Shown: positions 17,687-39,848, counted from the first letter of the stretch. The stretch is DNA of 64,000 bases from Vitrella brassicaformis CCMP3155 (GCA_001179505.1 CDMY01000363.1:36108-100107); one strand, 5' to 3'. Notes: generated by a model not told the origin, from the sequence alone. Numbers and translations: made by a program.

Positions 17687-18068
17687 TGTGCGACGGTTAG
17701 TACCTGAAGCAGAGCAGACACACATCACCGCCGCGGTGGCTCCTTCATATAGGTGTGACCAAGGCATAACTTACAATGAATTTCTCAATCACCAAGGAGA
17801 AACTCCTCCTCCACAGCAACTCATCCTCCCCTCAGCTCAGCGACTCCTCCTCCAATCTGCGAGCTTGCGAGCTTAGTTTTCCTCCATGAGTAGGAATATC
17901 CCTGAGTAGGTTCTTCTCTGCTGTTCTGTCCCAGTAACGTGTCCAGCGCTCTTGCGAAGGCATGTGTCATTGAATTGCATTTGAGGTTCTGCGTGGAGAT
18001 CTGCGAGTGGAGATATCTGTTGGTGGAGATCTGCAAGTGTGAGTCACGGAGCCACTCACGACGCCACT

Positions 18069-21000
18069 ATGGTGGAGGGCAGGAGGAAGAAGCCCAAATC
18101 ATGGGCTCGGGTAGTTGATGGCGAGTCGTCTGGTGATGAATTTGATGACGCTGGTGATGACACACCTGTGCCGGCTGCTGCGGCAGGAGCACCGCTGGGA
18201 CGTGACGGCACGGCCCAGCTATCGAAGACTGATGAGTCGGGTGTTCACACCTTCTGGGCCGTCTTCCCAGCAACATGCATCTCAGAGGAATGTAAGCGAA
18301 CGCACCAAGACACACACTGCAGATGCCTGTGTGCATCTGTGTGGATGAATGTCTGTATACAGGCAGAGTTTATCTGCATTCTGACGCGTTTGGGTGGCAG
18401 CTCTCTGCGGCCAACAAGATGGAGCGGGTGCAGGGCGTCAAGCCGGATCACATCTTCTTCTACCTCAAGTGCCGCATCGAGCAGCCTCACATCAACTGCA
18501 AGCTCGCAGTCGCCGTGCCCCCGCGCCACGAGCTCATCTACGAGAAGGGTGACGCATCCACCTGGTCGCCAACCCACGACCGATGGATCGATTTCAGTTA
18601 CCTGCAGAACAAGTACGGCATCGTGGCATCTCGCCAGCACGTCCTGTACGTCAAGGATCATTTGGTGCAAGGCTTCTGGCAGACGCCCATGAAGATGATC
18701 CGGGACTTTTTCACACCAGGAGCTCGTGATCCGCAGGTCCACCTGCTGCCCCGGGGCTCATGGGCTTGGCGCAACACTTCGTCGCTCGTCTACCTTATGC
18801 CACCCATGCTCAAGAAGCTCGCCAGGGAGGGCCGGGTTGACATCCTTGAATGGAAGGCGCTGATCCAGGCAGCAAGTGTGGCGATGCAAACTGCGCGGAT
18901 CAAGTATATCGACTCCGAGTACCTCACGATCATCAGGGAGGTCCTGCAGCTTGGCACGAGCGTCCACCCCATGTTCGCATTCGATCCCGACTGCATCGAT
19001 TCTCGGCGTCCCCTGGCTGTTTCGGCTGCTTCTGAGCTGATTGCTGGACTGCGCCGGTCCTTCCATCTTATCCCACACCTGGCCGCGAGCCGAGACGCTC
19101 GTCAGGTGAGAGGGCACAGATGAGGGAACGCAATGAGAGGGCGTTTAGAGGGGGTATCACTGTGGCGCTGTCTGTTGCGTTCCTTCAGATTGCGGCTGAG
19201 TGGATGGACAAGTTTCTTCAGCTCCTCAAGCCCTCTCACCACGCTCTCCGCAATTCGAAGGACGAAAGCGAGTTGATGGGCTACATCCTGGTGTCGTTGT
19301 TCCGCGCGCAGCTCGTGGGCGAGTCCGTCAGCCACACGCAGCTCCTGGGGCAGTGCCAAGACGTCGATGTCATGCGGTACGTGTTGAAAGAGCTGATCGA
19401 GCTGTGCTTCACCGACGGCCGGCTGGATGTGGAGAAGGCGACGACCATCCTCCTGCTGGTGCCCATGCGGGAGTGCCTGAAGGATGCCATCGATCTCGTG
19501 TTGGACAGCCCGTTCCGGAACGCCTCCCTCGTGTGCAAGGGCCTGGTCCACAGACTGCGGGCGTATCCGACACACGCGTCACATGAAGAAGGTAGGGCTG
19601 GGAAGGCGGATAGAGTAATCATGATGGATACGAGCTGATTGTGTGATATCTGTTGTAGGAAGCAAGTTGCTGCATTTTCTACGAATCGTTCTTGATGCCG
19701 TCCACCAGCACGTAGCCTTCTTCTTCGAGGATCCAACGTGTGTGGTCTCGGTCATCGACCTGCTGGAGGAGATCATGAAAGCCCCAGCATTCGCAGTACG
19801 AGAAGCAGCGGGGAGCTCGCCGGATGGGCTAAACGCCTCGTGTGGCTGTGCTGTGTCCCTCAGGTTGAGATGGCGCTGAAGCACAAGCGCAGCGATCTCA
19901 TCATCAGCAAGTTTGCCGCCATATTCGCCCTGCCGGAGGCTCACCGGGCGAGCGAGCTGCCCAAGATGGGTCCTGTGCTCCAGTTGCTGCGACAACGCAT
20001 CCGCCGCTACCTCGACAGCGTCCAAGCAGACCGCCAGGTCAACAGGCAAATACCTACATGCTCAATCACATGTCGGCCTCGTATTGATTCGGCTGTCCTG
20101 CTCACTGCATCTGCATGTGCAGAAAGCTGCTTTCGAGATCTATCGTGATGTCTTGGCGGCCTTGTCAAACCTGTGGGACGAGCAGTCGAGTGACAGCGTC
20201 CTTAGCCAGCTGGTAGCTGAGGTCGTCAACAATCTTCCGAAAAGCTTCTTCGTGAACAGCAACATCATGGAGACTCCGCTGGTGCAGCTGCTGCCCCAGC
20301 TGCCACAAAACCTACAGCAGGTCCGCTGCAGAAAGACGTGCAGAAGAGAATGGCAAAGGTCACTTGTGTGGGTTTGCAGATCCTGAACAAGCAGGCATTG
20401 GAGGTCTTCGGTGCAGCAGCAATCGATGAGTCGAGTCAGCTGCAGTTCTTTGAGAAGATCCACAAGACGCTAAAGCGCATGGATGTGTCGCGCTACCAGC
20501 CCGCCCAGCTGCAGTATCTTGTGGACTGCACCACGGCCCTCCTCAGGCAGCTGGAGGAGTCCACCAAGCTGCCCCCAAGCACAGCTCAGTCCAGCGTGCC
20601 CCTCGAAGTGGTGCGGATGGTCGACAAGGCGGCTCTTTACCGATTCTTATCCCGATTCGAGGCTGATGTTGTGGCGTCCAATCTGACCGCAGCCATCCCA
20701 CAGCTCAGGACAATCGTCACTTCCCTCCAGCGATCATTCCTGGCTCCTTATCGCGATCTCCTCCATCAGCTGGGCAACGGAGATGTCTACAAGGCAACTC
20801 TCGACTTCATCTACAGGCACCAGGAGGCCTTTGCTGCAATTGCCGGCCAAGACAGTGAGAGGGAGGCGATTGTCAAGGCCATCGATGATCTCATGCGAAA
20901 GAAGCGGGCCATCGAGGACAAGGAGGGGACGTGTGAGGCCTTCCTCACTCAGTGCTGTACCGATGACGGCCCCCTGGGTGTCTACCGGGAGAGCTGTCGC

Positions 21001-24000
21001 ACGCGCCTCCATGAACACGCTGCGCTCAGGTCGGGGGACACAGATTAAACATGAAGGGACGGTCCGGACGTATGCTCTCCTGCCTTTTCTTCAGAGATGA
21101 GTCCGTTGGTCTCAAGAACTGGAGGGCCTTTGCTCTCGTGGAGCGAGATGAAACACTGCAGGTGATTCCAGTCTGACAACATCGCTGCACGAACAGCAGC
21201 TCTGGTGCCTTTTTCTCTTCTGGCAGGCCATGGGTTTCGCTGCCAGTGCGGTGAGCTCCCCGCTGTGCTACAAGCTGATGCTGGACTCGACCAAACTGGC
21301 GCCCTGCGGACCGCCGACCACCGTCTTCGACCCAGCAGCCTTTTCCCAGCTCGTGGAGGCGTCAGTGACGAAGTTCCAGGAGCAGCTCCAGTCCGCATAC
21401 GGCCTGCTCGTGTCGCCAAGGGCCCTGAATGCCGAGTGCTGGCCTCTTGTTCAACCGGTGATGGCGCTGCTGCCCAGCAGCAGACCGCCAGCGGCACACG
21501 AGACGCCTTCGCAGGCCCGCGAGAGGGCGCATCAAGACCGAGAGATTCGGCAGGCAGAGCTGCATCGCATCCTGACCCAGGAGGTCGCCCACCTGCAGCA
21601 GCTCATGCGGCAGATAGGCATCCCTGCCCAGAGGCTTTCAGGGGATGCTGACCTCGTCAGCAGCACGGAGCGATGGATCATCGCGTGGGAGACTGTGCCA
21701 AAAGTGGAGGCACTGCTTGCGCTGATCAAAGAGCATGAGATGTCGAGATTTCCTTTCGCCAGCAGCAGCCAGGACATGCAGCGGTTGAGGGAGCTCGCGA
21801 CTGAGGTCGCTGGCGCAACGACCAAACAGCAACTAGAGGAGCGGGTGTCAGACATGACCCGAATATGCCCGTCGCTCAGCCATGTGTCCCTCGACCAGCT
21901 CAAAGGCCTCCACGGTGCCATCAAGTCGTCGCTGCTCAGGAGGATCCTCTACCATACGGATGATGCATCCTTCTCAACATTCTTTGAGATGCGGTGAGTA
22001 CAGCACAGCACAGTTCAGGGTGGCGAAATCGGTCATCTCCTGCTGTTCGTGTTGCGCAGGCTGAGTCATGCTTCAGATCCGCTGGACGTCGACCTGCTGC
22101 AATCATTCAGGTGAATGAGTGACGATAGAGAATGAAGGTGGACAGAGGTCATTCCGCTCTGCTGCTGGCTGCGCATTTACAGGCGGCTTCGTCACGAGTT
22201 GTTCCCGTATCTTTCGTCAGCTGATGCGACGTTGGAGGAGTTCCTGCACACGTGTTCGATGCTGTCTGCCTTCGACATGGAGCTGTACACCAGCCATGCG
22301 GCGCGCATCACACACATGCTGTCGGCAGCTGCTCAATTTGAGGGCGTCACGGTGCGTACATGGCATCTGCGACGAAACACAACACACAAATGTCAATCGT
22401 GCATCACGTCGCTCGCTTCCTTGGTCTTGTCCGCAGGCGCTCGAGACTCTGTGTCACCTGTACAACTTCGGCTCATTCAACATCCGCGTGATCGACAATG
22501 CGAGTGACGCCACACTCATTGCATCCTACAAGCTGCCGGCCGGGACCTGCAATGAGCTGTCATACGAGGACCTGACCGAGCTGCGCAACCAGATCTCTCT
22601 GCAGGTGAGGAGTGGAGGGAAGTGGCAGGCACTCGATCCCATTCATTTGTTATGTCGTGTTGTACAGGACCTTCCGACCAGCCAGGACGACGACAATGAG
22701 GAGCCTGCAGCTGCAGCGACGACAGCAAGCGGTGAGGAGCTTCTTACAGTCAGCAGCCTCCTCCATAATCGCGACAAGAAAACAGGTGAGCGGGCAGAAA
22801 CCATGGGGCGTCATTCCGGCGAACCTGAGTGCTATGTGCGCCCTACGTTTCTGCAGCCTACGTGAAGGCCTTTGCAGCCAACCTTGAGAGCTCTGTGAGG
22901 ATTCGAGACCTGCTTACTGGTCTCTGCCGCGATGGTCATTTGCGCTACCAAGAAGGTGTTCTGCCCATTCGTGTGAGCTGCGAGGTGGACGAATTCCGGA
23001 GGGAGAGGGAGGCGCTGGAGGACGAATGACTGGTGTGGCGCAGGACACTGGCGGAGAGGCGGAGGGCGCTCCCCATCCTGTCGCTGCTGTCTGGCCCGAA
23101 GCAGCTCATCCGCATCTTGAAGCTGGCGAGGCAGTGTGCTCAAGCCGCCGGCACGGGAGACGAGATTGGTGAGGCCGTCCATCTGGACGAGTTGGCATCG
23201 TCGCTGTCGTTTGTGGCCCCTGTCAAGATGGATTTGCTGCGGCCTGCCATCGGTCCGCTGCAAGGTGTGTTTGAGGGGATACAGGACGAGAGCCAAGGAC
23301 TGAGGGAGGTCTTCTCGGGCGTTGCAAGCTTCTTGCGGGCGGCGTTCGAGTACGCCTTCCAAAGGCCTCAGGGCCTCCTGACTGGGCAGGCGCTGCCTCC
23401 AGGGCTCATGTCTGACACAGCAACTTCGCAGGCCCGACCACTTCGAAGCCTGGTGCAGACTCTGTCAGATCTGCCGATCCGCGAGGACCTTCCATTCGTC
23501 GTTGGCGAGACGGATATGGACAGCACTCTTTTCCTGGAGGTCGCGTCGGTCCTCTACTACATGGAGTTCTCTCGCAAGCCAGCTCCATGGTCAGCTGACA
23601 CACAGGAGAAGCCAGGACGTGGGCATGTGCCATTGTCTGTTATGTGTACACCTGCGTGCAGGGAGGTGTTGTTTCTGACCAGCAGGACAGCGACTGCTGA
23701 TCTGAATAGCTTTCTCGAGAGATGGGCAGAGAGCCACCTGCTGGAGGACCTGATCGGCGGGCAGAGGAGGGGGCTGTTCATGCTGTGCTGTGTCGAGGTA
23801 TCGGTAGAGACCGAGCAGGAAATCGTGTCGGTCATCATGCGACTGAGAGAGGAGCTCCGCGGGTAAGCGAATAGGCCAACGGGTACACACAGACATGCCA
23901 TGCAAGATGCCTTGTATATTTCCCTCTAGGATGGAGAAGAAGGCAAGAAAAGCAACTCTCGCCAAGACCCTACCGATGCTGATCTTGCAGTCGACGAAGG

Positions 24001-27000
24001 TATCACAAGTGGCGCCCATCGGCTTTGAGGCGCCCATGGCCGCCCCTCCGGCCAAGCTGCCCTCCGTCCTTGCGAAGACGTTTCCATCCAGAGTTATGCA
24101 TCTTGACGTTATCTGCGGACAGAGGTACTCACCGCCACTCACCGACTTGGAACAACTGATCCTCTGACTCGATGACCCTTGTTGTTCCAATTCCCCAGGA
24201 CGTCGCCAGCTGAGGAGCTGATTCGGAACGTCGGCGGTGCAAGGTCGATGGTCTACGCCACCAGAGAGCCGTGCACTGGCAAGACAAGAACGGTGCTGTT
24301 TGAGTGCGCAGCGGAGAACGAGGCCTTTTGCACCATCACACTCAACCATGACGTTGATCCGTCGACGCTGCACACTGCCTTCCGGCGGGTCGAGGAGGAG
24401 CGGACTCGGGTGGAGATGTTCAGCAAGAACAGAACGGCTGTGGGGTTCCATCTATCGGTGTCCCCGTCAACCAATGGCATGGATCTGAACAACGTACTAT
24501 CTCAGCTCGTCTTTGTCGGCCGTCTGGTGACCCCTGGTGGTGACGTCATCCGCATGAGGGAAGGCGACCGACTGCACGTCGAACTGCCGTCAAATGGCGT
24601 CGATGTGAATGCGACCATCGCCCACCTTCCAATCTGTCGTCTGCTTCCGCACCATGCTGTGACGCCCCATCTCGAGGCCAAGATGCCCCTTCTCCTGCCC
24701 GTGATGGATGACTGCCAGATGCTCTACAGGGTGAGGGAGGCTGCAGACACCGCAATGCTCGAGAGTGCGAGGATGCTTCGTGGCTTCCTCGATACACTTC
24801 CCACTCGCGCGCTGCCGTCCACCTCCCAGCTGGAGCAGGTAAGGATGGGGAGCACAATGGAGCTGCTCATCTTCACTCATGAGTTGTTGTATTTTTCCCT
24901 CGATTAGATGGCGGCAGAGGACGTCGATGCCACCATTACTGAGGTGCTCCGGCCTCAAACAAGACTGCAGCTTTACGGCAGAGATGTGGCGGATGGTATA
25001 GGTAACGAACCTCGCCTGCTCGAGAAGGTCCGGCTCGTCAAGTTCATCAGTCCAGCCCTCCGCTCCATCATGGCCTTCGACACGCATATCGCGAGCGCGA
25101 TTGACGCAGGAGAGCAGAAGCTGGTCAGCATGTTCAAGCATCTGCTCGCGAATCTGATGCTGCGGAGCGCGATCGATGTCGCCGCGGCAGCAGTGGAGCC
25201 CCCGCCGGGCCTGTCCAGCACCGAGGACGGCTACATCAGGCGGTTTGACCGGATGATGACCTTCCAAGGGTCGCATCTCTTCTTCGTCATTCACCACAAG
25301 GACAGTGACGGCACCCCACATTACAACCCCATCGGTCTGCATCAGGAGGGCCAGTCGCTGCTGGCGTCAATCCTGGCAGAGTACCCGCAGGGTCTCAAGG
25401 GCACACAGTATCTGGTGGCGTGGATGAGGGACAACCTTCGCTTCAGCCCTCAGGATAGCGAGGCCGTGGAGCGTGAGACGCTCGTGAGTGTTGACAAGGG
25501 ACGGCGACGCATCTGGTAAGGAGGGAGCTGAAGAACGAACAAATCACAAGAACTTGCCTAACACGCCTTCCTCTCCGTCGACACTGCTCAGGGAGTTGTT
25601 TCATGCACCGACACATCTTCGTCTGCTCGACAGCCTGACGGCCCTCGAAGAGCTGCAGAGAAAAACAGCAGTAAGGAAGGATGACAGGGCAATTCAGCGG
25701 GCTTACGAGACAGCCAGGGAGGCCTATGAGGACTTGGTTATGGGCGAAGTCCTCATAGGCCTGGAGGATGAGGACGACATGCCGACCTTCGAGAGCATCA
25801 CGGACAGCGGTATCGTCAAGCGGTTCCTCATGAAACATGCGATGCTTCCCGAGGTGACAGTGACGCTGGAGAACTTGGTCAGGCTGATATCCGTGGAGAT
25901 GCGCATGAAGGCAAGGATGCCTGTCATTCTGCAAGGTACACCACAAAGGCAGGCAGGCAGGCAGGCAGGTAGGTGGCAAAAAAATGTTGTACGGATGCAG
26001 GTGAGACTGGTTGTGGCAAGACACAGTTGGTGCAGTTCCTCTCCAGAATGCTGGGCGCGTCGTTCTTCGCTGTCAATGTCCATGGCGGCATGAAGGCTGC
26101 CGACTTCGAGGAATACCTCCGGCCGGCCATCGAGGCAGCGAGAAACGCCTCAGCTGCCAAGAAAGTGTGTCAAGCGAGCCATGACATGGAAGGGCAAGAG
26201 TGTGCGCCTCATCGAGTGTGTCCTCTTTGCGCTTTCGTGCTCAGGTGTATGTGTTGCTTGACGAGGCCAACTCCAGCAGTGACGTGTGGTCCATCAAGAG
26301 GCGGTGGTCGATGGTTTCCTCAACGGCGTCCGCATCCCCGAGTCGATCGCCTTCATCTGCTGCATCAACCCCACACGCGCGAAGCGCACCACACTGGCCG
26401 AGCATGAGAGTGCTGGTTTGGACTTGGAGCTGATGCGCTTCGGAGAGGACGTTGCGTCACCAAATGGGGCATCACTTCATCGACAAGGAATCAGCCCGTT
26501 CGCTGGACTGGCATACCCCGTGTACGCTCAAAAAGGAAGGGGGAGGCTGGACTGATCGCCATTCATGGCTCTCTGTGTGGTCAGGTACCGTCTGGACGAG
26601 AGCATGATTTCCTACGTGTGGGACTTCGGCAGTCCGGCTGAGAACGTCCTTCAGCCCGCTGCAGCTGAGGCTGCATGCCACCGCCGCACTCTCTTTCTGG
26701 ACAAGTGCATGGTCACTGACGAGTCGCTGTACGCAGAGGCCATATGCGCCTACTCACCCGTGGAGAAGAAGCTGCGGTGGGTGTCAACGATGAAGATGCA
26801 CGTCAGCGACTCGCTGTCCATCGTTGTTGTCCTCCTCTCAGGTCCGATGCTGCATTTCTGGATGAGCTACGCGCATTTGGAGGGACCGAAACATACTGGC
26901 GGCACCTCCGCACACTGATTGTTGCCCTCGGTACGCCACAACGGCTAGACACAGCCGCGAAGCGATATCTGTGGTGCGTGTGGCGCAGTGTCGCAAGCCC

Positions 27001-30000
27001 AGTACTTCGTCCGTCACGATATCTACAAAGGCGACACGAGCGCAGTGTCCCTTCGCGACATCCGCCGATGCATCGACATGATCCCCGTCATTCTGGACCT
27101 CATTGACAAGAAAGCTCAGTCCAAGGTGGCCAAGACAGTCGAGACGGGCGGGACGAGGGCCATGAAGGTGTCGGCGGCACTCCAGACATCCCTCACCATC
27201 TGTAAGCACGTCCACGGCTGAGCGGGCAGCAGCAGCAACTTGTCTATTCGTCTTGTTTTGTGCTTTGTAGGCTATGCATTGCGTCTGCCGCGCGAGAGGA
27301 GGCCAGAGTTTGCGGCTGAGATGACCAAGACGTGGGAAAGTGTCCGCGGCCACTTTGAGAACACCAACGAGGGCTTCTTCCCGGTGCCCAACACCGAGCA
27401 CTTCGAGGCGCCCTTCTTTGAGTTGGCTGAGTTTGTTGCTGACCAGCTGATTCGCCCGTCGGGCATCGCCCTCAACCACATGCTGCTCGAGAACACGCTC
27501 ACCCTGCTAGTGGCCATCATCACAAAGACAGCCATCTTCCTTGTGGTCAGCAACGAGAGGGAACGGCACAGAAGAGGCAGCTGCATTCGGACGGCCTCTG
27601 TTTGTTCAGGGCAAGCCAGGCACGTCCAAGTCGTTATCAATGGAGCTATTATCGGCCTCGATGTCCGATCGCGAGCATCCCTTCTGGTCCCTCCTTCCAT
27701 CGGTGACCAAGAAGACGGTCCAGTGCTCCCCCCTCACCACGCCACATGCCATCCTCCAGGCGGCCAACCATGCTGCCAAGGTCCAACTGCGCGAGTTACA
27801 ATCCGACTCGGAGCACACGGCCGTGCTGGTGCTGGAGGAGATCGGAGGTGGGTGCAACACATGGTGCAAAAGGTCTGTCTTGGCATCTCATGGTCGTTCT
27901 GTGTGTCCTGTCCTCTGGTCTCTTGTAGAGACTGTGTTGTCGCCACACAATCCCTTGATGACCCTACACGGCCTGATCGACCATGGTGGATGAAAAGGTT
28001 GGTCACTATGCAGCATCTATTCGTCTTTGCTGGTCGTGTACAGGCGTCAATGTGGACGGCAAGAGCGTCAAAATAGCCATTGTCGCCATCTCGAAGTGGA
28101 AAATCGATCCCGCTAAGATGAACAGAGGAGTCTTTTTGTTCAGGTGGGTTGCGTCGAGAAGCCAAGGAGAGAGCAGTGTCGACACTGAATGCTACCTCCC
28201 TCTGATGTGCAGGGGCACTCCATCTGCGTCCGACCTCTCCGAGACCGCCTTCTCCATCATCTCGTCGTCAACCTCATCCCACCAGCTGGAACTCTACGAC
28301 CGGCGAAGCGAGTCCCATTCACGCGTCGACGAGGGTAGGGCTCTGCACTTTGACTCCACTTCTTGTTACATCCCCACCTGACTTTGTTGCTTTTCGTCAG
28401 TTGGGTTCGTTGCGATCAATGAGGAGTTGCGTGAGAGTGTTGCGGCCCTTTCGTCCATACTCGAACTGAAGTTCAACGATCGAGAGGTGACGCCCTGACC
28501 GTACACCAAAAAACGACTCCTTGACCTGACGGTTTTGTCTTGTTTCATCCTCAATGCAGTACAATTGGTACTACGGCAGCCGCGATATGTACGCACTGCT
28601 GACCTTTCTTCACGGGAGCCTCTCGTCGCCCCCCGGCGGTACTGGAGTGGTGCCTCTCGATCTCCACCTAGCGCAGTGGGCCATCGAGCGGGCCTTCGGG
28701 GAGATCCCTGAGTGTGACGGCGTCCCGCAGCCCAAGGACAAGGGCGTCCTGCTCCAGAGCCTGACCAAGGCATTAGCCAGTGGCAAGACCCGTCGCGAGC
28801 AGCCCGCAGCATGGCAACATTGCGCCACCAAGGTGGTCTACTGCAACAGCTGTGCAACGGCGCTTCACCAGCTGGAGCGGCGACGTGAGTGGGCCGGCCG
28901 CAGCCAGGATGACGAGACTGAGCGATCGGAGGCGGAGAGTTTCCTCGAGCGATTCACGCGTCTCCGCACTCCGAATCAGACGTGTAAAGGGGGCCCGACT
29001 ATGGTCAGCCGCATCGCTTGGAACCTCAATGACGAGAAGGCGCGCCACCTCCTGCTCATCACGGACGGAGCGGCAGGTCATCTGCTGCTCTTTCAACTGG
29101 GCCTGGCGCACTTCGAGTCGACCAAGATCATCATCGGGTCGCAGAGCTCGGACGACGCAGCGCTGCTTCAGGATCTGCAGAAGATTCAGCTGGCGATGCG
29201 GACGGGTCAGCTGGTGGTGCTCGTCAACTGCTTTTTGATCTTCAGCAGTCTGCTGGACATGCTCAACCAGCACTACAAGGTTGAAGCGGGCCGGCGACTT
29301 GCCCGTTTGTCCATGCACTCGCACTCGCGGTACTTTCCCGTCCACCGGTCGTTCCGTTGTGTGGTGGTGTGCGATCGGGCTGACCTTAAGCGCCTCACGC
29401 CACCTTTCCTCAACCGATTTGAGAAGGTACAACACATGCAAGGCACACGCACACCAATGCTGCCAGACATTGCTGTTGGTGCCTATTCGTCAGGTTGAAT
29501 TGACCATGCAGAAGGCCCTGACACTGCCACACGATTGGCTGATGAAGGAGCTGCAACACAGGCTGATCTTACGCAGCAGTGGTGAGGCCCTACATCTCGG
29601 CGAGATCATTCTCCCAGGCTTCGACGCTGCCAACACCCTCCAGTCGCTCGTCCTCTCAGTGCTGTCTGTGGCTGACGCAGACCAGCAGAGCGAAAAGGAC
29701 AGACTGATGACGATTGCTATGAGTCGCCTGGTCTGGGCTGCCCGCACATGCGCGATGCTGGAGATGATGACCGGACGCATCGAGTTGCTCCAGAGAATGA
29801 CTCGCGATTCTAGGACAGTGGTGCACATCAAGGACAGACTTTTGGAGACCTACTTCAGTTGGCAAGTCCACGATTCCCTCACTGATGTCCAACTGCGAGG
29901 CCTCCAAATCCTTCTCGGTAGGTCACCACTTGATGAATAGCGGGTGGCGTCTGTTGTCACACAAACATGAATCATATTTGTGTGTGCTGGTCGCAGGCGA

Positions 30001-33000
30001 CAAGACGTGGGCTGCTGGGCAGGACGATGATGACGACCTGTGGGCCGAGGAGAATGTGCCATGGGGGGACTCCACCGGCCTTCAGCTGTGTGTCCTGACC
30101 GAGCAGAGCCATCGGCTGTGGAGCGCCAAGTCCCTCAAGGGATACTTCAGTGCAGGACAGTCTGACCAGGCGTCGAGCGTCGAGAGGCGATTCTTCACAT
30201 TGGATGGCAGCGACGCCATGGCTGCACTTGAAGATGAGCTCGACGCCCTCTTCAGTCCAAAGACCGAGAGCTCTTACCTCTATGTCCTCTGCGATCAGGC
30301 GGCCGTGCCGGAATCGACCGTCCGCCACGCACTGTTTTGGGCGAGTGAGAAGAGGAAGGCATTCAAGGCGAGACTGGCTGCCGAGGAGACTTCAGGAGAG
30401 GCGGTCGACGTCCCCACAGCCAATCGTCATCTCATCTTCATTTCTCAACAGCAGGGCCATAGTCTTGTCTTCACTGCTGATTGGCATGTGGTGTATTGCG
30501 ACGAAGTGCTGCCGACAGAGCCACTGCGAAAGGCCTGTCCGTCCCTGCGCGATTTCCTCGACCGTCCAGCCTTCCCTCGGTCCGTGTCGCAAGAGACGAG
30601 GGAGGAGGGTGCTTATGGAGAAGCCGCAGCGCCAGACCCCGACAGACCACGACCAATCGATGAGGACGTCTCGCCCCTCGTTTCTCTGTCCCGCGACGTG
30701 CCGCGCGACTCTCTTAGCCTCTCGATGATGATTCAGGGTGAGATCGGTCTTGTGGTGTCGTCGCTTTACTACCCGTCCGACAAAGAATCTGGACAGCAGA
30801 CGCGGTCGCGGTCAGTCGACATCCTGAAGGCGAGGCTCGACAGGCTGGTAGGTCTTCTACAGCTTACCAGCGGCCCAATGGATGCCGTCCTGCAGCGATG
30901 TGTGGAGGAGCTAGCTCATCACAGCGTCTTCCACACAACTGCCAGCTGGCTCGACGAGGCGCAGAAGATGGCAGTGCCCTCAAAGAGCACCCGAGGCTGG
31001 CTCTTTTCGTATTTGCGGCATGCCTGTGTGACCACATTTGTGAATGTCGTGGCCTTTGTGGATCGCCACAGCAATCTCGACCTCCTGGTGCACCAAGAGA
31101 CGCGGGAGATGTGGATGGACCTGTTCCGCTGCCCTGCGATCTCGGGCTCTGCACAGGTACGTGCAGCACGGATGGAGCGTGCACGTGGCGCCATGCATAT
31201 TGTGCATTATGCATGTTTTCCACTTTTCAGGCTGCCACTTTCGCCAAGGACATCGTGAAGCCCCCAGGCACACAGTTTGTGTCAGTGGAGAACCCCACGA
31301 TGCCCACCGCCGATGGTGATGAGCACGAGACGACGCATCCCACTCGACAGCTGGGCCTTGGTGGTGGTGCCGCCTTCAACTCGCATTACTCTGTGGAGTT
31401 CCCCTTTTCGTGGCTCATCGCACCCGTCGTGCGTGCACAAATGGATGTGATGGAGAGAGGAGCCAACCGTCGCAAGCGCCTCAGGTGACTGATGGCACAA
31501 GCCCATGGTGCAGACAGGATCCTGTGACTGATTGTCCCTCGTGTGTGGGTATGCAGTGATTTGACCCACCTTTCCTTCCCAATGCTGACCGACCTGCCCG
31601 TGCAGCTGTGTGTGCGATATGTGCGGGACGTCCTGTCGAATGTGCTACATCTCGGAGCGAAAGAAGAGACGCTCAAGACGGCACTCGTGTGGCTTGTTTG
31701 GGCGCTCCAATGCCCTGGAGGTGATGGCAATGAAGAAGAGCTCGCGGGCTTGAGATACATCGATGTTCATCTTGCCTTGTGGTAAGCCAGGCAGACTGTA
31801 GCATATGTCTACACTGATGCTGGTTGGATCCTTTGTACACAGGATCCACGATCGCCTCTTTTTGGACATCGTCAAGCTTGCACGAGAGCTCAAGGAAGCC
31901 GCCGTCAAGAGGAGTCTCCAGCAGGGGCAACGGGCAGCTCACGAGCTGAATGCAGCGTCTGACAAGGAGCTTCCGACCTCGGCTCAGGTGTTTGTCAACC
32001 TTCTGGGCTGCGAGGCTGTTGCGGCGACCTTTCAATCCATCACGGCCAGCACCGGCCAGTCATATGGCCTCCTTGATCAGGAGTTCCCCCTCAGCTACGA
32101 CGGCCTCATGCGCGCCTGGTCGAGCCCCTTTGACGCGCCCCTGCAGGACGACAATTCCGTGTCTGAGGCAGAGAGCTCATCTGCCGCGTTCTCTATGGCT
32201 GCGAGGCTGCCGAGTGATCTGCAGTGGCTCAGTGTCCTTTCCCAGACATGGCAGAGCCTCAAGGGGCACGCCCAAGGCGCCCGCGCCATCGCACAAGCGA
32301 TTGCACGTGCCTTCAAGAAGAAGGTGGAGGAGCTGCGATGCACCAGGCAACATTCCAACTTCGGGGAGCAGTTTTACTTCGTGGTCGACCTTGTGGCGCA
32401 CGTTGCGGCCTCTGCTGACGACACTAGTGAGTTTGACGAGAGCCAGAGGCTCGCCGACAGCTCCTCCCTGCTGCTGGTGAGAGCTTGTCGAGCCCACCTG
32501 TCTGGACTTCGCAGCCTTCCAGACGAGGATCGTGTCGGGGTGCTGCCCCAGGTGCTGCATTCTGCGCTCGACATCCTTCTAGCCCGCCAGGAGCCCTTCC
32601 GCGACGAGTGGCGTGGATTGCCTTTCGAAGGAGCCCACGCAGTGCCAGTCAACTCAGCGGTCGCCGCTAGCCTCTTGGGCGCCTTCTTTGAGATGATGAA
32701 GGACTGTTCTCATGACCGTGGCAGCCTGGCCATAGTGGATGAGATGCTGTCGTGTGAGATTGACAAGGAGGCCAACTCAGACGATGACAGCTTTGCCGTA
32801 CTGCTGGTGGTGAGCGGCATCACACACACCATTCCTATTGGCGTGCATGTGTATATGTGGTGTGTGTGTGCGTGTGTGTGTGCGTGTCAGCAATGTCGGA
32901 TTGACTGGCTCCATGCCCAAGAGACAAGCGCATCACTGCCCGGCCTGCTGCAACAGCTTCCAGATTTGCTCCTTACGGCGGCGCCGCTTTCATCATCTGC

Positions 33001-36000
33001 GGCCACGCACCCGCCTCAAAGACGAGCGTGCTCTTCCTTTTGGCGGCTGATGGTCTTCGCCCATCTGAAGCTCATCACTCAGCTGGCTGCCAAGGCACTG
33101 AAGGGGATGGTCACCACCAGGCCGCATCGCCAGCAGCCGATTGACCAAGAGGCGCTGCGGAACCTCCTGGATGACCTTTTCGTCCGGCACCTCCGCCCAG
33201 CAGAGAGCCTCACACAACTTGATCTGCAGCGAGACTCCATCATCGCCGCCCTGTCTTTCGTTGCCTTCCAATGCAATGCGCCTGCGTGTCGGCACTCGCT
33301 CGTCATTCACATCCTTCGTTCGCTCAGCAACGGCGGGACGGACCTCCAGGGGGCCCGAAGGATTCTCAAGAGGGCGTCGGAGAGGCTGGACAACCCGGGA
33401 ATCACCCGCACAGGGGCTGCGAGGCTCTTCCTGACCCCATCGGACTCCAAGAAGGCCAGCATGTTTGCCCTCCAGCCGTGCTTCGTTGCTGCCCGACGCA
33501 CGCTGATGGAGTTCGTCAGTGGCGTGCTGCCCATGCCCCATGTGGTGGCGCGACTGATGGGGGCACCAGACGGACGGCATACCAACCGGTACAGCCAGGT
33601 ATTCGGCGCAGTCCTTGCGGCAGTGGACCTTTACATTGCTGAATGCCGCCATGAGCAGCAGCAGCAGCAGCAGGACGACGTTGCGGCAGAGCGGCCTCGT
33701 TTGGATGCTTTGGAGGATCTCGTGCTCAACCACCTGCACGCGCAGCAGCTCCAGGGCCCCCACGCCAGGGCGTTCATCCATCGGTTGCTGAACCGCCAAG
33801 AGCTGCAAGGCCTCATGGCAGGCCCGCTGTGCAGTCTGGAGCAAGCTGGCTGCCTCGAGCCATTTCTGCTCTTCTGTTTGGGTCTGCTGTGTCTGCCGCA
33901 AGAGGCGACGGGGGGAGGGCTGGGGTTCTTCCTGCAACTTTTTGCCCGTCCTGATGATGCGACGACACAGTTTCTGCCTGGAGTGGCCCAGAGCAGGTTC
34001 CACGAGGCCATCCGTGCCTTTCCGCCTGCATTCTGGGTCTACACATGCCCGAAGCGCCATCCTTACGTGACTGGTACGATTGACAACAACAGAGAGGACG
34101 ACAGAGATAAAGGCAGGTGCTCATAGGTCGTTTACTGCTGTTGTGCGTCCATTTGAAGGTGAGTGTCATCACATTTCAAGCCAAGGCACATGTATCGAGC
34201 CCGGCTGCGGGGCGCCGATCGGCGGTCTACGTGGTCAGCTCCAGCCCGGGAATCGGCAGCTTGGGAACGTCCAGTCCGTGCTCGCCAACTGGAACACCTT
34301 CAGCTTCCCCGAGACGAAGGGCTACTTGCCCGAACCGGTGGACCCCACACGCACAGAGCGTAGCCTCCACCCGGCCCTCTTCCGTGTCCTTCGCTTCTGC
34401 CTCTCGTCCACATTTGTCATGGCCTATGCGGGGACCCAGCCTGACCAAGCTGAGCGGCACGCTGAGGCGATCCTGACAGACATTCGAGCATTGAAGAGGT
34501 GCCTGTTTGCCAATGATGTGACAATGGAGAGTACTTCCCTCGCGCTTGTGTCGGCCATCCAGTTGCTGCTGGACCGGAACGGCGGTCAGGCTGTGCCGGC
34601 TGCGGTCCACTGCTGGCCATTGACCAGCCTCGCTCAGCGACAAGCGCTCGAGCGAGCCCTTGTGCAGTCGATTCGGGACGATTTCGTGGGCAGGCAAAAC
34701 GACCTCGTCGCGCAAGGCCAGAGGGCGGTCCAAGACGCTGTCGAAACGCTGACACGCAACGACATAGAGGATGCTGTCCGAGTCGATCTCCAGTACGTGA
34801 ACGCGCAGCTGAACCGCAGCAATGTGGAGCGGCTGATGTATCTGCCTCGGCAAGTCAAGTACTATCCCCCGATGGACCAGCAAGGCTTCTGGCTGTACTT
34901 GGATTCACAGCCAGACACTGAGGGTCAGTTCGGTGTCCTGCAGTGCCTCAAGCGACACGAACAGGAGCTGCAGCTGCTGTGCTACCTTCCAGCTGTTCTG
35001 CGCTTCTTCCACCTGATGCGGGTGCATGCCGACAACCGCATGACGAGCAAGGAGGCAGCGGATCGCACTCTGGACAGCTTCCTTGACGAGATCAAGCAGA
35101 GCATGACAGAAGCCCTGCATCGAGCTGAAATGGAAAGGGCCGTGGAGGACTTCACGAAGGCATGGAAGGGAGTGTGGCCGTACGTCAAGCAGTGGGATTG
35201 CGTCAATTTCGACGATGGCGGCAAGCATGCCGCCATCAAGCGGGACGCGATGACTATGGATCTACACGAGCTGCGCCTATCGATGTTTCTGCCCAGCAAG
35301 CAGGGTCTCGGCATAGCGAGCAAAGCCCTTTACTCAACGCTGGCCATGAAGCAGCGGAGCGTCATCGAAGACCTCAGGAAGAAGATGGACTTTGTGCCTC
35401 TCTCGCTCGAGGCGACGCCATTCAAAGTGACGGAGGACGACCTGCTGATCTTCAGGAGCAGCGAGCATCTCCTCCCCTTCCTGCCACATTACGTCCACAG
35501 GTATTTGGATACGTTCACTTCAGCAGCAGCGATGAATCCCCGCTGCGTCCCTCCTCGTTTTGTTTTTCAGAGACTATAGACTGGAGAGCAGCGGCCCTGT
35601 GGAGTATCGATTCCTCAAGGTGCTGCAATCGGAGGTCATCCAGTGCCTCAGAATCACAGAAAAGGTGGGGAACAACACACTCAACAGTGCACTAACTACG
35701 GCTGCTTGACTTACTGTCCATATCAGCCTATGCTCGCCGCTGAGCTGCCGTCGATTCGTTTCCTTGACACGCTGGAGGGGTCGCTTTTCTCCGACCTGGA
35801 CCGCAGAATCCCACAAGACGCCGCACTGCCCATTGTGGTGCAACGAGTGAGTGCGAAGACAGCTGCACTTCAACTCGATGGATGCGTCTGTCTGCCACGT
35901 TGGTTGGTGTCGTCGCCACGTGTCATCAGGTGTTGAGGGTTGAATTGAGAGATGAGTCAGCTGTTCGCGAGAGCCTCTTCCACTTTGTCCACTTCCTCGC

Positions 36001-36799
36001 CACCATGTGCCTCCAAACAGGAGCACAAGACATGCCCCTGTCCGAGTTCGCCTACTCAAGCGGCGAGAGTGGAGACATCATGCGGACCTTCCTCAACCAA
36101 GACCAGCAAAGGGCGCGCTCTGTGCTGCTGCGGTCCACTGAGCTCCGGTCCCAGCTGCAGCTGAGGCACCTCCGGGCGCTGGCGGCGTCTTTGTGGAGTG
36201 GCAATGTGCATCACAACTATAACCAGGCGCCTGTCCCCGACGAGAAGGCGTTTCTGGACCGTCTGATTGCTGGTCTGTCTGCTGAGGACGAGCGACAGCC
36301 GGCCGTCCAGCCGCTTATCAATACTCTGCGGCAGATCGGCCTCGAGCAGCTGGGCATTGACCGAGTGAGTGCCATGACGCCGTTGGCATTCTTCACCAGC
36401 GACGTCTTCGACCGGGAGCCCTGTCCAGATGTGGCCGATGCGCTCCAAGGGCTGCTCTTGGCTGTCTTTGGGCCCACCCTTCGAGTGCTGGAGGAGCAGC
36501 TCAGCGACGATGCCACCACGGCTGCTCGCGCGATGGGCCGTGATGCAGATGAAGGGGATGACTCGGGTCACACCGGAGGGGAGGGTGTGAATCTTGCTGA
36601 GATGTGGGCGGAGCAGGATGACAAGACCCCTGACACAGCAAGCGAGGTGTCGGTAGCAGTTTCGGCTGCAGTGCCCTCTGTACCGACGCCTCAGCAGCTG
36701 ACAGCTGAGGTGCCACGAGAGGAACACGCGTCGGTGTCTGGTGCACGATGGAGGCCTGCGGGTTTGCTGTCGAGGGCTGATCATGCCACCTTGCAGTGA
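18069..36799 (+). CDS. RNF213: RNF213/mysterin-like giant AAA+ ATPase E3 ubiquitin ligase with RZ finger (about 5,300 codons, about 40 introns); carries an in-frame TGA (23027-23029) and a 1-nt deletion (near 26299), so possibly a recent pseudogene or assembly error
   Basis: RNF213 motifs occur in order: ATREPCTGKT, MPVILQGETGCGKT, LLDEANS, FICCINP, YRLDESMISYVWDFG, VSLRDIRRC, FLVGKPGTSKS, QCSPLTTP, LEEIG, IDPAKMNRG, YGSRDMYAL, LDMLNQHY, PFLNRFEK, and RZ finger YTCPKRHPYVTGECHHISSQGTCIEPGCGAPIGG. Splice phases were traced by hand across the gene. Confidence 0.9.
25945..26023 (+). other. Walker A GETGCGKT of the first canonical AAA module, split by intron 25946-26000
   Basis: CAA G|gtacac...gcag|GT GAG ACT GGT TGT GGC AAG ACA. 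Confidence 0.9.
27610..27633 (+). other. Walker A GKPGTSKS of the second canonical AAA module
   Basis: Translation after intron 27546-27609; corresponds to RNF213 GKPGSSKS. Confidence 0.9.
34040..34225 (+). other. RZ (RNF213-ZNFX1) finger, split by intron 34074-34158
   Basis: The spliced sequence YTCPKRHPYVTG|ECHHISSQGTCIEPGCGAPIGG follows the C-x3-H...GEC...C-x2-4-C-x-A-P-I-G-G pattern. Confidence 0.85.
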
Positions 36800-37361
36800 A
36801 AGGCTGTAGACAGATGGGATCATGCTTTTTTTCCTCCGCTGAGTTTTTTTTATCGGGTCCAATGAAGCTCTGTGATGATGTTCTAGCTGCACATGCCCGA
36901 TAGGTCCCTTTATCGAATGCTTTGTGGCCTTGCACGCGACTGGCGCGTCGGCAGCCGTATGCTGCTGTTTTTGCGACACCACCCACCCACAAGGTGGGTG
37001 AATGTCATTCATAGATAGCTATGTGTATTTTACATTCGCATTACGGGTGCATTTATTTATCTACACGAGACAGCTCTTCTGTGGCCCCAGACGCTATGAG
37101 AGTCAGACCTGTGATGTCAGTCAGTAGCTATCCAAGTCGTGCACTTTCAGTGAGTGTGGCGTTGACTGTGCATTTTTTTCGAGGCACGCGAGAACGAAGA
37201 GGGTCTGTTAAGGAAGACAATGAATGTCATGGCACTAGTCACATACGCAGTGCACGAACGAGTTGAACGATGAACACTGATTGCACAACTAACTGTACAG
37301 TCATCGATCCATCGCACACGCTCAGCCATTCTACATGAAGAACACTCCCCCCTATCCCTCA

Positions 37362-39814: not shown

Positions 39815-39848
<34 letters not shown>

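What the first reader, a model, noticed from the sequence alone, without database searches (positions are those of the whole stretch)
18069..36799. Full-length RNF213/mysterin-like ligase in an apparent chromerid, with RZ finger but no RING
Size, motif order across the AAA core, E3 module and C-terminal domain match animal RNF213, the E3 that ubiquitylates bacterial LPS through its RZ finger and targets Toxoplasma vacuoles. The segment RQHSNFGEQFYFVVDLV appears to match the region just after the RING in human RNF213, and the roughly 100 residues before it have no Cys/His RING pattern. A RING-less, RZ-only mysterin in a free-living relative of apicomplexans would suggest an ancient cell-autonomous immune ligase with RING as a later insertion. 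I cannot tell whether this homologue has been described.
Basis: partly seen in the sequence, partly recalled or inferred. Interest (0 to 1): 0.85.

Follow-up and report, generated by a model that had tools for sequence, protein, structure and literature searches.

The report
RING-less RNF213-like gene in Vitrella
This stretch of the alga Vitrella brassicaformis encodes a giant relative of the animal immune ubiquitin ligase RNF213 that keeps the RZ finger and lacks the RING, but many other non-vertebrate relatives also lack the RING, and here the reading frame is broken in two places.

Summary
The window is Vitrella brassicaformis CCMP3155, contig CDMY01000363.1. The span 18069-36799 holds two annotated + strand models: 1346 aa (18069-23029) and 3824 aa (P0001, 23228-36799).

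**Family.** P0001 matches mouse and human RNF213 at E 4e-60 in collinear stretches: AAA3, AAA4, AAA5/6 and the RZ finger. Midasin scores 9e-15. The E3 module aligns to a family profile at E 1e-22.

**RING and RZ.** No RING or U-box is detectable. The RZ finger keeps its zinc ligands and the catalytic Cys, but the dyad His is Gly.

**Full-length claim.** It holds only after joining the two models. They share one frame, separated by a single TGA (23027-23029). A 1-nt frame break near 26297 in AAA3 is hidden in the annotation by an atypical 257-nt intron. Whether these are real lesions or assembly errors is unresolved.

**RING as a later insertion.** This is not supported.
- RZ-bearing relatives occur in Rhizaria, stramenopiles, Picozoa, Physarum, sponges and corals, and many lack the RING.
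- Chlorarachniophytes carry a U-box at the RING site.
- RING loss occurs inside cnidarians and sponges.

This is a new member of a known kind, of moderate interest. Other first-stage notes of this scan cover the same stretch.

The parts
18069..23029 (+). Upstream annotated gene model (1346 aa), the presumed N-terminal arm and linker of the RNF213-like protein. It ends at an in-frame TGA.
   Evidence: The called gene is listed (locus position + 13227 = window position). My own splice model gives 1280 aa. Only its last ~140 residues align to homologues. No Pfam family matches. Codon log-odds are typical of coding sequence.
23027..23029 (+). In-frame TGA that separates the two annotated models.
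   Evidence: Homologues P0002, P0003, P0004 and P0010 align across it in frame without a gap, with a conserved Trp three codons downstream. No acceptable in-frame GT-AG intron removes it. The same letters stand in a Logan contig of DNA run X2 at depth 22, which may be the assembly's own source.
23030..23227 (+). Annotated 'intergenic' 198 nt. It is an open frame continuous with both models and has a coding signature.
   Evidence: Codon log-odds are +0.28 per codon in frame, against -0.40 and -0.25 off frame. In-frame windows of the gene average 0.25 +/- 0.08. It is aligned by homologues.
23228..36799 (+). Annotated gene model P0001 (3824 aa, 28 exons): AAA core, E3 module, RZ finger and C-terminal domain.
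   Evidence: An exact exon map reproduces P0001. The PDB sequence search gives RNF213 at E 4e-60.
25719..29556 (+). Dynein-like AAA core matched to RNF213 (P0001 residues 712-1633).
   Evidence: Three collinear phmmer stretches match mouse RNF213. 73 family members score E <= 1e-37.
26000..26023 (+). AAA3 Walker A, GETGCGKT.
   Evidence: The motif is GETGCGK[TS] in all 26 family members examined.
26254..26271 (+). AAA3 Walker B, LLDEAN.
26296..26299 (+). Frame break in AAA3. Coding continues one frame back, as if one nucleotide were missing.
   Evidence: Homologues read V-W-x-x-K-E-x-x-x-D without a gap. The window holds VWSIK in one frame and EAVVDG... in the next frame, overlapping by one base.
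26298..26521 (+). AAA3 sensor-1 region (…ICCINPTR…), left out of P0001 inside an atypical 257-nt 'intron' (26328-26584).
   Evidence: tblastn of P0003, P0009, P0006 and a rodent RNF213 gives E 3e-11 to 8e-7. Codon log-odds are +0.19 in this frame and -0.24 and -0.26 in the others. A typical 63-nt intron, 26522-26584 with a GTACGC donor, restores the homologous join.
27610..27633 (+). AAA4 Walker A, GKPGTSKS.
   Evidence: mouse has GKPGSSKS.
27823..27846 (+). AAA4 Walker B region, VLVLEEIG (mouse VVVLDEVG; the first acidic residue is Glu instead of Asp).
30809..34045 (+). E3 module (hinge and E3 shell; P0001 residues 2025-3007), all-helical.
   Evidence: hhalign against a profile of 34 family E3 modules gives probability 99.5, E 1e-22 over 897 columns. 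The AlphaFold2 model has pLDDT 63. The top nine Foldseek PDB hits are all RNF213. VIA-align gives Z 12.8 to the human RNF213 E3 module, residues 3701-4425, with the next hit at 7.5.
32288..32413 (+). Site equivalent to the RING or U-box of other family members. The conserved flanks abut and no domain lies between them.
   Evidence: MAFFT of 38 E3 modules places the animal RING in columns 1022-1086 and the chlorarachniophyte U-box in columns 1009-1110. Vitrella is gapped there. Pfam finds no RING or U-box at E <= 0.05. There is no C-x2-C pair.
34037..34256 (+). RZ finger (P0001 3005-3049), split by the intron 34074-34158. Zinc ligands are C3008, H3012, C3028 and C3033. The candidate catalytic Cys, C3019, is at 34164-34166.
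   Evidence: Pfam PF20173 scores E 1.2e-8. The four Cys are invariant in 37 family sequences. The finger aligns to the mouse RZ finger. The dyad His position is Gly.
34257..36796 (+). C-terminal domain (P0001 3050-3824).
   Evidence: phmmer to the C-terminal domains of family members gives domain E 5e-15 (Epipyxis P0003), 4e-13 (Halichondria P0061) and 8.5e-9 (Gymnochlora P0007), all collinear.

Best explanation
This locus is one ancestral gene of the RNF213 (mysterin) family in Vitrella brassicaformis. It runs, in order: about 1350 codons of N-terminal region, a dynein-like six-AAA core with nucleotide-site motifs in AAA3 and AAA4, a helical E3 shell without any RING or U-box, an RZ finger, and a C-terminal domain.

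By analogy with mouse and human RNF213, an intact product would work as follows. ATP binding to AAA3 and AAA4 switches on the ligase. A charged E2 docks on the E3 shell and C-terminal domain, not on a RING. Ubiquitin passes by transthiolation to the RZ-finger cysteine (here C3019) and then to a substrate.

Shown here: family membership, domain order, absence of the RING, and presence of the RZ zinc ligands and the catalytic Cys. Inferred: every biochemical step and any role in defence.

In this assembly the reading frame is broken twice, by an in-frame TGA at 23027-23029 and by a one-base frame break near 26297 in AAA3. The annotation hides both, by splitting the gene in two and by drawing a 257-nt intron. 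I rate it about even that these are real, very recent lesions (a decaying or split gene) rather than base-level assembly errors.

The RING-less state is one of several recurrent states in a family that is widespread in eukaryotes. It is not evidence that the RING arrived late.
For: - **Family.** RNF213 scores E 4e-60 in four collinear stretches, against midasin at 9e-15 and dynein at 0.016. 73 family proteins score E <= 1e-37. AAA3 Walker A is GETGCGK[TS] in all 26 family members examined.
- **E3 shell.** hhalign gives E 1e-22, Foldseek returns RNF213 as its top nine hits, and VIA-align gives Z 12.8.
- **RZ finger.** Pfam scores E 1.2e-8, and four Cys are invariant in 37 sequences.
- **C-terminal domain.**
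- **No RING.**
- **One frame across the TGA.**. In the same clade, AAA3 lies about 2000 residues into the protein in Epipyxis P0003 and in P0004, but at residue 784 in P0001 alone.
- **Frame break in AAA3.**
- **Lability of the RING.**
- **Mechanism in mammals.** The RING is dispensable, the RZ Cys/His dyad is catalytic, the E2 is recruited by the C-terminal domain, and ATP activates the ligase (PMC12075652, PMC8567218, PMC13015453).
Against: - No transcript evidence was obtained. The RNA-labelled runs gave no contigs on 18000-23999, and no transcript-derived fragments were found.
- The frame break at ~26297 was not checked against reads.
- The N-terminal ~1140 residues show no detectable homology to anything.
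- The RZ finger is atypical: C-x4-C instead of C-x2-C, and the catalytic-dyad His (mouse H4483) is Gly, while it is His in 44 of 51 family members. Activity is therefore not assured.
- AAA4 Walker B has E-E instead of D-E.
- The E3 model is of middling confidence, pLDDT 63.
Confidence: 0.8

Rival explanations
1. The gene is intact and functional in the organism. The TGA and the one-base gap are base-level errors of the 2015 draft assembly, or the TGA is read through, and a single ~5200-residue RING-less RNF213-like ligase is made.
For: About 5170 codons are otherwise open, with a uniform coding signature and 27 regular introns of 58-85 nt. Only two lesions in ~15.5 kb of coding sequence means little or no decay. 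The stop is UGA followed by C, a context that I recall as leaky in several eukaryotes; this is from memory and untested. RNA-labelled run X1 shares 17% of the sampled words of 27500-37000.
Against: A Logan contig assembled separately from DNA run X2, at depth 22, carries the same TGA, though that run may be the source of the assembly. Two independent errors within 3.3 kb of an Illumina-era assembly would be unusual. There is no slippery sequence at the frame break.
Confidence: 0.35
2. The annotation is right. There are two separate genes, and they encode an N-arm-like protein (1346 aa) and an N-terminally short AAA/E3 protein (3824 aa) that lacks the AAA3 sensor-1 strand. These act separately or as a two-chain complex.
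For: This is the public gene calling. An ATG stands at 23228. P0002, the closest homologue, is also short at the N-terminus, with 958 residues before AAA3.
Against: The 198 nt between the models are open, in frame, coding-like and aligned by four homologues. The 257-nt intron is three times the length of any other intron in the gene and removes conserved AAA3 sequence that is coding-like in another frame. P0002 may itself be a partial model.
Confidence: 0.15
3. One reading: the Vitrella protein preserves a primitively RING-less, RZ-only ancestral immune ligase, and the RING was inserted later on the animal line.
For: All four members of the Vitrella clade (Vitrella, P0002, Epipyxis P0003, P0004) lack a RING. 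This clade is the deepest split under midpoint rooting. The RING is dispensable for mammalian RNF213 activity (PMC12075652).
Against: A U-box sits at the same site in Amorphochlora and Gymnochlora (E 1e-12), and an eight-Cys RING-like motif sits there in two metagenomic homologues that group with the protist sequences. RING-less members are nested among RING-bearing ones in cnidarians and sponges, and at least 5 state changes are needed on the tree. The tree is unrooted and the Vitrella clade has long branches. No evidence bears on an immune role.
Confidence: 0.2
4. It is not RNF213-like but another giant AAA protein (midasin, dynein or MoxR-like) that happens to carry a zinc finger.
For: Generic AAA_5 and AAA_7 Pfam hits. 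One source names a related metagenomic protein 'MoxR-like ATPase'.
Against: RNF213 outscores midasin by 45 orders of magnitude and matches in four regions, including the RZ finger. Midasin matches a single AAA module. The E3 shell and C-terminal domain are specific to the family.
Confidence: 0.01

Closest known systems
Mammalian RNF213 / mysterin (PDB 6TAX, 6TAY, 7OIK, 8S24, 9JWG)
   Same: Same overall size and order of parts. AAA3 Walker A is the identical GETGCGKT, and AAA3 Walker B is DEAN. AAA4 Walker A is GKPGxSKS. The helical E3 shell is homologous (hhalign E 1e-22; VIA-align Z 12.8 to human 3701-4425). The RZ finger keeps its four zinc ligands and the catalytic Cys. The C-terminal domain is present.
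   Different: There is no RING. The dyad His (mouse H4483) is Gly, and two His follow the catalytic Cys directly. The last zinc pair is C-x4-C. AAA4 Walker B is E-E. The N-arm and CBM20 are not recognisable. The reading frame is broken twice in this assembly.
RING-less RNF213-like proteins of other eukaryotes: Physarum polycephalum, Incisomonas marina, a Picozoa-linked cluster, Amphimedon, Halichondria, Stylophora, Oculina
   Same: The same architecture: AAA core, E3 shell, RZ finger and C-terminal domain, with the RING flanks abutting.
   Different: Most of them keep the canonical RZ finger (C-x2-C and the dyad His; Amphimedon has Tyr at the His position). Vitrella belongs to a separate long-branched clade with P0002 and two chrysophyte-type proteins.
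Chlorarachniophyte RNF213-like proteins (Amorphochlora amoebiformis P0006, Gymnochlora P0007)
   Same: Protist members of the family with an RZ finger and a C-terminal domain.
   Different: They carry a U-box (Pfam PF04564, E 1e-12) about 520 residues before the RZ finger, in the same alignment columns as the animal RING. Vitrella has nothing there.
ZNFX1, the other RZ-finger ligase
   Same: It shares the RZ finger fold and, by the literature, the transthiolation chemistry (PMC13015453).
   Different: ZNFX1 is an SF1 helicase with a variant RING. No helicase family matched here beyond a sub-threshold P-loop hit at the AAA3 Walker A, and the whole-length similarity is to RNF213.
Midasin (MDN1/Rea1)
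   Same: A giant protein with dynein-related AAA_5 modules. It is the next-best PDB match (E 9e-15).
   Different: Only one AAA module aligns. There is no MIDAS domain. The E3 shell, RZ finger and C-terminal domain are absent from midasin.

Membership tests
RNF213 family (broad sense: AAA core + E3 shell + RZ finger + C-terminal domain) | Dynein-like AAA core whose best match is RNF213, with Walker A motifs in AAA3 and AAA4 | tested here: met
   PDB phmmer gives E 4e-60 in collinear stretches, with midasin at 9e-15. GETGCGKT and GKPGTSKS are present. However, the AAA3 sensor-1 region lies in a shifted frame.
RNF213 family (broad sense: AAA core + E3 shell + RZ finger + C-terminal domain) | Helical E3 shell between the hinge and the RZ finger | tested here: met
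   hhalign against a 34-sequence family profile built without Vitrella gives E 1e-22 over 897 columns. Foldseek and VIA-align match solved RNF213 E3 modules.
RNF213 family (broad sense: AAA core + E3 shell + RZ finger + C-terminal domain) | RZ finger with four zinc ligands and the catalytic Cys | tested here: met
   Pfam PF20173 scores 34.9 bits against a cut-off of 27. C3008, C3019, C3028 and C3033 are invariant in 37 sequences. H3012 is present.
RNF213 family (broad sense: AAA core + E3 shell + RZ finger + C-terminal domain) | Catalytic-dyad His after the IGG motif (mouse H4483; PMC12075652) | tested here: not met
   The position is Gly in Vitrella and His in 44 of 51 family members. His3020 and His3021 follow the catalytic Cys, and whether they substitute is unknown.
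RNF213 family (broad sense: AAA core + E3 shell + RZ finger + C-terminal domain) | C-terminal domain after the RZ finger (the E2-docking part in mouse) | tested here: met
   Collinear phmmer matches to family C-terminal domains, domain E down to 5e-15.
RNF213 in the strict vertebrate sense ('RING finger protein 213') | C3HC4 RING about 500 residues before the RZ finger | tested here: not met
   Pfam finds no RING or U-box at E <= 1 in the whole protein or E <= 0.05 in the E3 segment. There is no C-x2-C pair in residues 2140-2975. The alignment is gapped at the RING columns.
RNF213 in the strict vertebrate sense ('RING finger protein 213') | N-terminal arm with a CBM20 carbohydrate-binding domain (PMC11549300) | tested here: inconclusive
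   No Pfam hit in the upstream exons at E <= 1. The Atlas look-alikes are uninformative. hhalign to the clade's N-terminal regions gives E 0.06, no better than a reversed control. The single-sequence AlphaFold2 model has pLDDT 38.
RNF213 in the strict vertebrate sense ('RING finger protein 213') | One uninterrupted reading frame of about 5200 codons | tested here: not met
   In-frame TGA at 23027-23029 and a one-base frame break near 26297.
RNF213 in the strict vertebrate sense ('RING finger protein 213') | ATP-gated E3 activity, ubiquitylation of LPS or lipid A, and pathogen coating | not testable with these tools
   This needs a biochemical assay. The literature covers mammals only (PMC12075652, PMC11549300).
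ZNFX1 | SF1 RNA helicase core before the RZ finger | tested here: not met
   Among helicase families, Pfam gives only a sub-threshold RNA_helicase (PF00910) hit, E 0.034 and 15.1 bits against a cut-off of 21.5, at the AAA3 P-loop (residues 780-835). All whole-length matches are RNF213.
Midasin | Six AAA_5 modules followed by a D/E-rich linker and a MIDAS domain | tested here: not met
   Midasin aligns only to residues 710-827. Pfam finds no MIDAS or VWA family.

The most novel reading that the evidence does not exclude
The RNF213 family is an old, pan-eukaryotic invention, found in Amoebozoa, SAR, Picozoa and Metazoa. Its constant core is the AAA ring, E3 shell, RZ transthiolation finger and C-terminal domain. 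The RING or U-box at a fixed site in the shell is an optional accessory that has been lost or swapped many times. Within this family, the Vitrella/P0002 lineage has re-wired the RZ active site: the dyad His after the IGG motif is lost, and a His appears next to the catalytic Cys (C-H-H in Vitrella, C-E-H in P0002). This would be a natural experiment on the minimal RZ ligase. Nothing found in the searched literature describes this distribution.
Probability: 0.45. Interest if true: 0.6.

Novelty: new member of a known kind. Interest (0 to 1): 0.4.

Why it matters
RNF213 is studied almost only in mammals, as the moyamoya disease gene and as the ligase that ubiquitylates bacterial LPS. The Vitrella gene, and the survey it prompted, show three things:
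- The AAA, E3-shell, RZ and C-terminal-domain machine exists in free-living protists of several supergroups.
- The RING is dispensable in evolution as well as in the test tube.
- The RING site can hold a U-box instead.

This supports the view that RZ transthiolation is the conserved chemistry of the family, and it offers small natural variants for biochemistry.

It does not by itself show an ancient immune role. This particular copy may be decaying, which limits its value as a model. It is also a practical warning about annotation. The public models split the gene at a stop codon and hide a frame break inside an oversized intron, so the UniProt entry is not the true product.

Tried and rejected
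- **Single large exons give no RNF213 match.** Pfam and PDB searches with single exons found nothing for RNF213. The family was recognised only with the whole model P0001.
- **The E3 shell is too diverged for pairwise search.** phmmer of the E3-module exon against 1.84 billion representatives found only the protein itself.
- **No transcript evidence.** The two RNA-labelled runs gave no contigs there, and only a DNA contig identical to the window was laid. Splicing and the TGA therefore remain untested in RNA, and the frame break at ~26297 was not checked against reads.
- **No intron removes the TGA.** In-frame GT-AG candidates have very poor acceptors (-6.1 against 3.1 to 10.7 for real ones). 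The well-scoring sites give 59- or 71-nt introns that shift the frame into non-coding-like sequence.
- **The exact RING deletion point is not fixed.** Flank-only HMMs around the RING site did not detect Vitrella significantly.
- **The N-arm stays unidentified.** Pfam on the upstream exons, the ESM Atlas, hhalign to the Epipyxis and P0004 N-terminal regions (E 0.06, reversed control 0.12) and a single-sequence AlphaFold2 model (pLDDT 38) were all uninformative.
- **No transcript-derived fragments.** Searches over the frame break found nothing.
- **Literature.** Searches for RNF213 together with Vitrella, protists, metazoa or LECA found no paper describing non-animal homologues. The library is incomplete.
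- **Midasin or dynein identity** was rejected on scores.


Full report
**Source and gene layout.** An exact-sequence look-up places the window on Vitrella brassicaformis CCMP3155, assembly GCA_001179505.1, contig CDMY01000363.1. The window has about 58% G+C and short introns. The second is protein P0001, recovered from the 1.84-billion-protein library as the only hit of the largest exon. I mapped P0001 onto the window as 28 exons. With GT-AG introns of 58-85 nt, plus one of 257 nt, the splice model reproduces P0001 exactly.

**Family assignment.** Single exons gave nothing in Pfam or the PDB. The whole of P0001 matches mouse and human RNF213 at E 4e-60 in collinear stretches:
- AAA3, where Walker A GETGCGKT is identical to mouse and Walker B is DEAN
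- AAA4, with GKPGTSKS against mouse GKPGSSKS
- the AAA5/6 region
- the RZ finger

Midasin follows at 9e-15 for a single AAA module, and dynein at 0.016. Pfam finds AAA_5 and the RZ-type finger (PF20173, E 1.2e-8, above its cut-off) and no RING at E <= 1.

**E3 module and the missing RING.** The E3 shell is too diverged for pairwise search, but three results tie it to RNF213:
- A profile of 34 family E3 modules, built without Vitrella or P0002, aligns to P0001 2025-3075 with probability 99.5 and E 1e-22 over 897 columns. The alignment includes the conserved DR..NL.LL and FPFSW motifs.
- An AlphaFold2 model made with a 37-sequence alignment has middling confidence, pLDDT 63. Its nine best Foldseek matches in the PDB are all RNF213.
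- VIA-align gives Z 12.8 over 528 residues to the human E3-module map, model 169-900 against chain 3701-4425. The next hit scores 7.5.

Several results show that the RING is absent:
- In a MAFFT alignment of 38 E3 modules, the animal RING occupies columns 1022-1086, about 500 residues before the RZ finger. Vitrella is gapped there, with the conserved flanks close together.
- P0001 residues 2140-2975 contain no C-x2-C pair at all.
- Pfam finds no RING or U-box at E <= 0.05 in that segment.
- The introns are too short to hide an exon.

The quoted segment RQHSNFGEQFYFVVDLV is at 32345-32395. Its second half resembles the post-RING motif FFVDLVS of rodents, and its first half resembles the pre-RING SRFGIQ. 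The aligners disagree on this placement and flank-only HMMs are not significant. The exact junction is therefore uncertain, but the absence of the domain is not.

**RZ finger.** The finger is split by the intron 34074-34158. The family-invariant residues are C3008, C3019, C3028 and C3033, with H3012 also present. In mouse, the Cys equivalent to C3019 (C4462) takes ubiquitin from the E2, with H4483 as its partner in a dyad (PMC12075652). Vitrella differs in three ways:
- The last zinc pair is C-x4-C instead of C-x2-C.
- The dyad position after the IGG motif is Gly, whereas it is His in 44 of 51 family members.
- Two His follow the catalytic Cys directly.

The closest homologue, P0002, shows a similar pattern: Tyr at the dyad position and C-E-H after the Cys. 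Whether this is a relocated general base or a weakened site cannot be told here.

**The gene is one frame, broken twice.**

The first break is the TGA. The upstream model ends at TGA 23027-23029. The next 198 nt are open in the same frame and run straight into the annotated ATG of P0001. Four lines of evidence show that this 'intergenic' stretch is coding:
- Its codon log-odds are +0.28 per codon, like real exons (0.25 +/- 0.08) and unlike off-frame sequence (-0.35 +/- 0.13).
- Four homologues (P0002, Epipyxis P0003, P0004, Incisomonas P0010) align across the stop in frame and without a gap, with a conserved Trp three codons after it. E values run from 2e-16 to 1e-3.
- Full-length members of the same clade have AAA3 about 2000 residues into the protein, whereas P0001 alone has it at residue 784.
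- No acceptable intron removes the stop.

A Logan contig of DNA run X2, at depth 22, carries identical letters over 18000-23999. That run may be the assembly's own source.

The second break is in AAA3. The Walker B part (…LLDEANSSSDVWSIK) is in one frame. Its homologous continuation (EAVVDGFLNGVRIPESIAFICCINP…, the sensor-1 region) follows immediately in the frame one base back. Homologues read V-W-x-x-K-E-x-x-x-D without interruption. The annotated model avoids the shift with a 257-nt intron, three times longer than any other in the gene. That intron deletes about 74 codons that have a coding signature (+0.19 in frame, -0.24 and -0.26 off frame). A regular 63-nt intron, 26522-26584, restores the homologous join.

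I could not test either break in RNA, or the second break in reads. Two lesions in about 15.5 kb of otherwise clean coding sequence mean either a very recent inactivation or base-level errors. I put these at roughly even odds.

**N-terminal region.** Only the last ~140 residues of the upstream model align to homologues. The first ~1140 residues have no Pfam family, no useful Atlas neighbour and no profile similarity to the clade's N-terminal regions above a reversed control. A single-sequence model was useless, at pLDDT 38. Calling this region an RNF213 N-arm, or saying it holds a CBM20 as another note of this scan proposes, rests on position and length alone.

**Family survey.** A search with the AAA core returned 73 family proteins at E <= 1e-37. 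With the names, the sources are:
- vertebrates, tunicates, amphioxus, molluscs, cnidarians and sponges
- Amorphochlora and Gymnochlora (Rhizaria)
- Incisomonas and Epipyxis (stramenopiles)
- a cluster with a Picozoa member
- Physarum (Amoebozoa)
- several metagenomic lineages

Most carry the RZ finger. At the fixed site in the shell, the state varies:
- **C3HC4 RING:** vertebrates, Styela, Nematostella, Oscarella and Dreissena.
- **Variant Cys-rich motif:** other bivalves, and two metagenomic homologues that group with the protist sequences (P0005, P0008). The motif in those two is not significant in Pfam.
- **U-box** (PF04564, E 1e-12): the two chlorarachniophytes.
- **Nothing:** Vitrella, P0002, Physarum, Incisomonas, the Picozoa-linked cluster, Amphimedon, Halichondria, Stylophora and Oculina.

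An AAA-core tree (43 rows, 973 columns, quick search) puts Vitrella in a fully supported but long-branched clade with P0002, Epipyxis P0003 and P0004. RING-less corals sit next to RING-bearing Nematostella, and RING-less demosponges sit near RING-bearing Oscarella. At least five changes of state are needed on this tree. Pfam detects neither a RING nor an RZ finger in P0003 and P0004.

The RING or U-box is therefore a labile accessory at a conserved site. It was lost secondarily at least in some animals. Since it also stands in the protist-grouping homologues, it probably predates animals. For the Vitrella clade itself, the unrooted tree cannot separate loss from primitive absence.

**Mechanism.** By analogy with the mammalian enzyme, an intact product would be an ATP-gated transthiolating E3. 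The published mammalian findings are:
- The RING is dispensable for autoubiquitylation and LPS ubiquitylation.
- The E2 (UBE2L3) is recruited by the E3 shell and C-terminal domain.
- Ubiquitin passes through the RZ cysteine.
- ATP binding to AAA3 and AAA4 activates the ligase (PMC12075652, PMC8567218, PMC13015453).

Vitrella has all the parts that this mechanism uses. The exceptions are the canonical dyad His and, in this assembly, an in-frame AAA3. Substrates and any defence role are unknown, and nothing here tests them.

**Novelty and score.** The protein is already in public databases under an automatic name, 'RZ-type domain-containing protein'. No paper in the searched library mentions it or non-animal RNF213 homologues, but that library is incomplete. 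I rate this a new member of a known kind. The family-wide pattern (pan-eukaryotic spread, a U-box at the RING site, repeated RING loss, a re-wired RZ finger in one clade) is the more interesting product of the work. The possible decay of this copy lowers its own value. Interest 0.4.

Noticed in passing
window 37362-40645 (- strand; L001 24135-27418): The gene tail-to-tail with the RNF213-like gene encodes a 763-aa protein with RING-family Pfam hits on record (zf-C3HC4, zf-RING_2, zf-RING_UBOX). Another note of this scan calls it TRIM-like. Whether it relates to the RING-less neighbour is unknown.
   Followed up: no
proteins P0006 (Amorphochlora amoebiformis) residues ~4126-4189 and P0007 (Gymnochlora) ~4081-4144: The chlorarachniophyte RNF213-like proteins carry a U-box (Pfam E 1e-12) in the alignment columns where animal RNF213 has its RING, about 520 residues before the RZ finger.
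   Followed up: partly
proteins P0003 (Epipyxis sp. PR26KG, 4822 aa) and P0004 (Logan contig, 4849 aa): The chrysophyte-type members of the Vitrella clade keep the AAA core and the C-terminal domain but show neither a RING nor an RZ finger in Pfam or in a family RZ profile. They may be ligase-dead giants, or they may use another site.
   Followed up: partly
window 34164-34172 and 34224-34232 (P0001 C3019-H3020-H3021; G3041 at the dyad position): In Vitrella and in P0002 the conserved His after the IGG motif is missing (Gly, Tyr), while a His appears one or two residues after the catalytic Cys (C-H-H, C-E-H). This may be a relocated general base.
   Followed up: partly
window 32810-32890: This intron is largely a (GT)n/(GC)-like low-complexity run and happens to be open in frame. 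In a naive ORF reading, the 773-codon stretch 31805-34123 therefore looks like one exon.
   Followed up: yes
window 18069-18400: The 5' end of the upstream model is uncertain. My splice model gives 1280 aa against the annotated 1346 aa. It needs two unusually long introns (160 and 109 nt), and no good donor stands at the position that would give 1346 aa.
   Followed up: partly
proteins P0008 (cluster of 20, JGI metagenomes) and P0009: Several ~5000-aa family members sit on 16-17 kb metagenomic contigs that they fill almost entirely, which means intron-less genes. One source names them 'MoxR-like ATPase'. Their organisms are unknown, except for a Picozoa member in the P0009 cluster.
   Followed up: no
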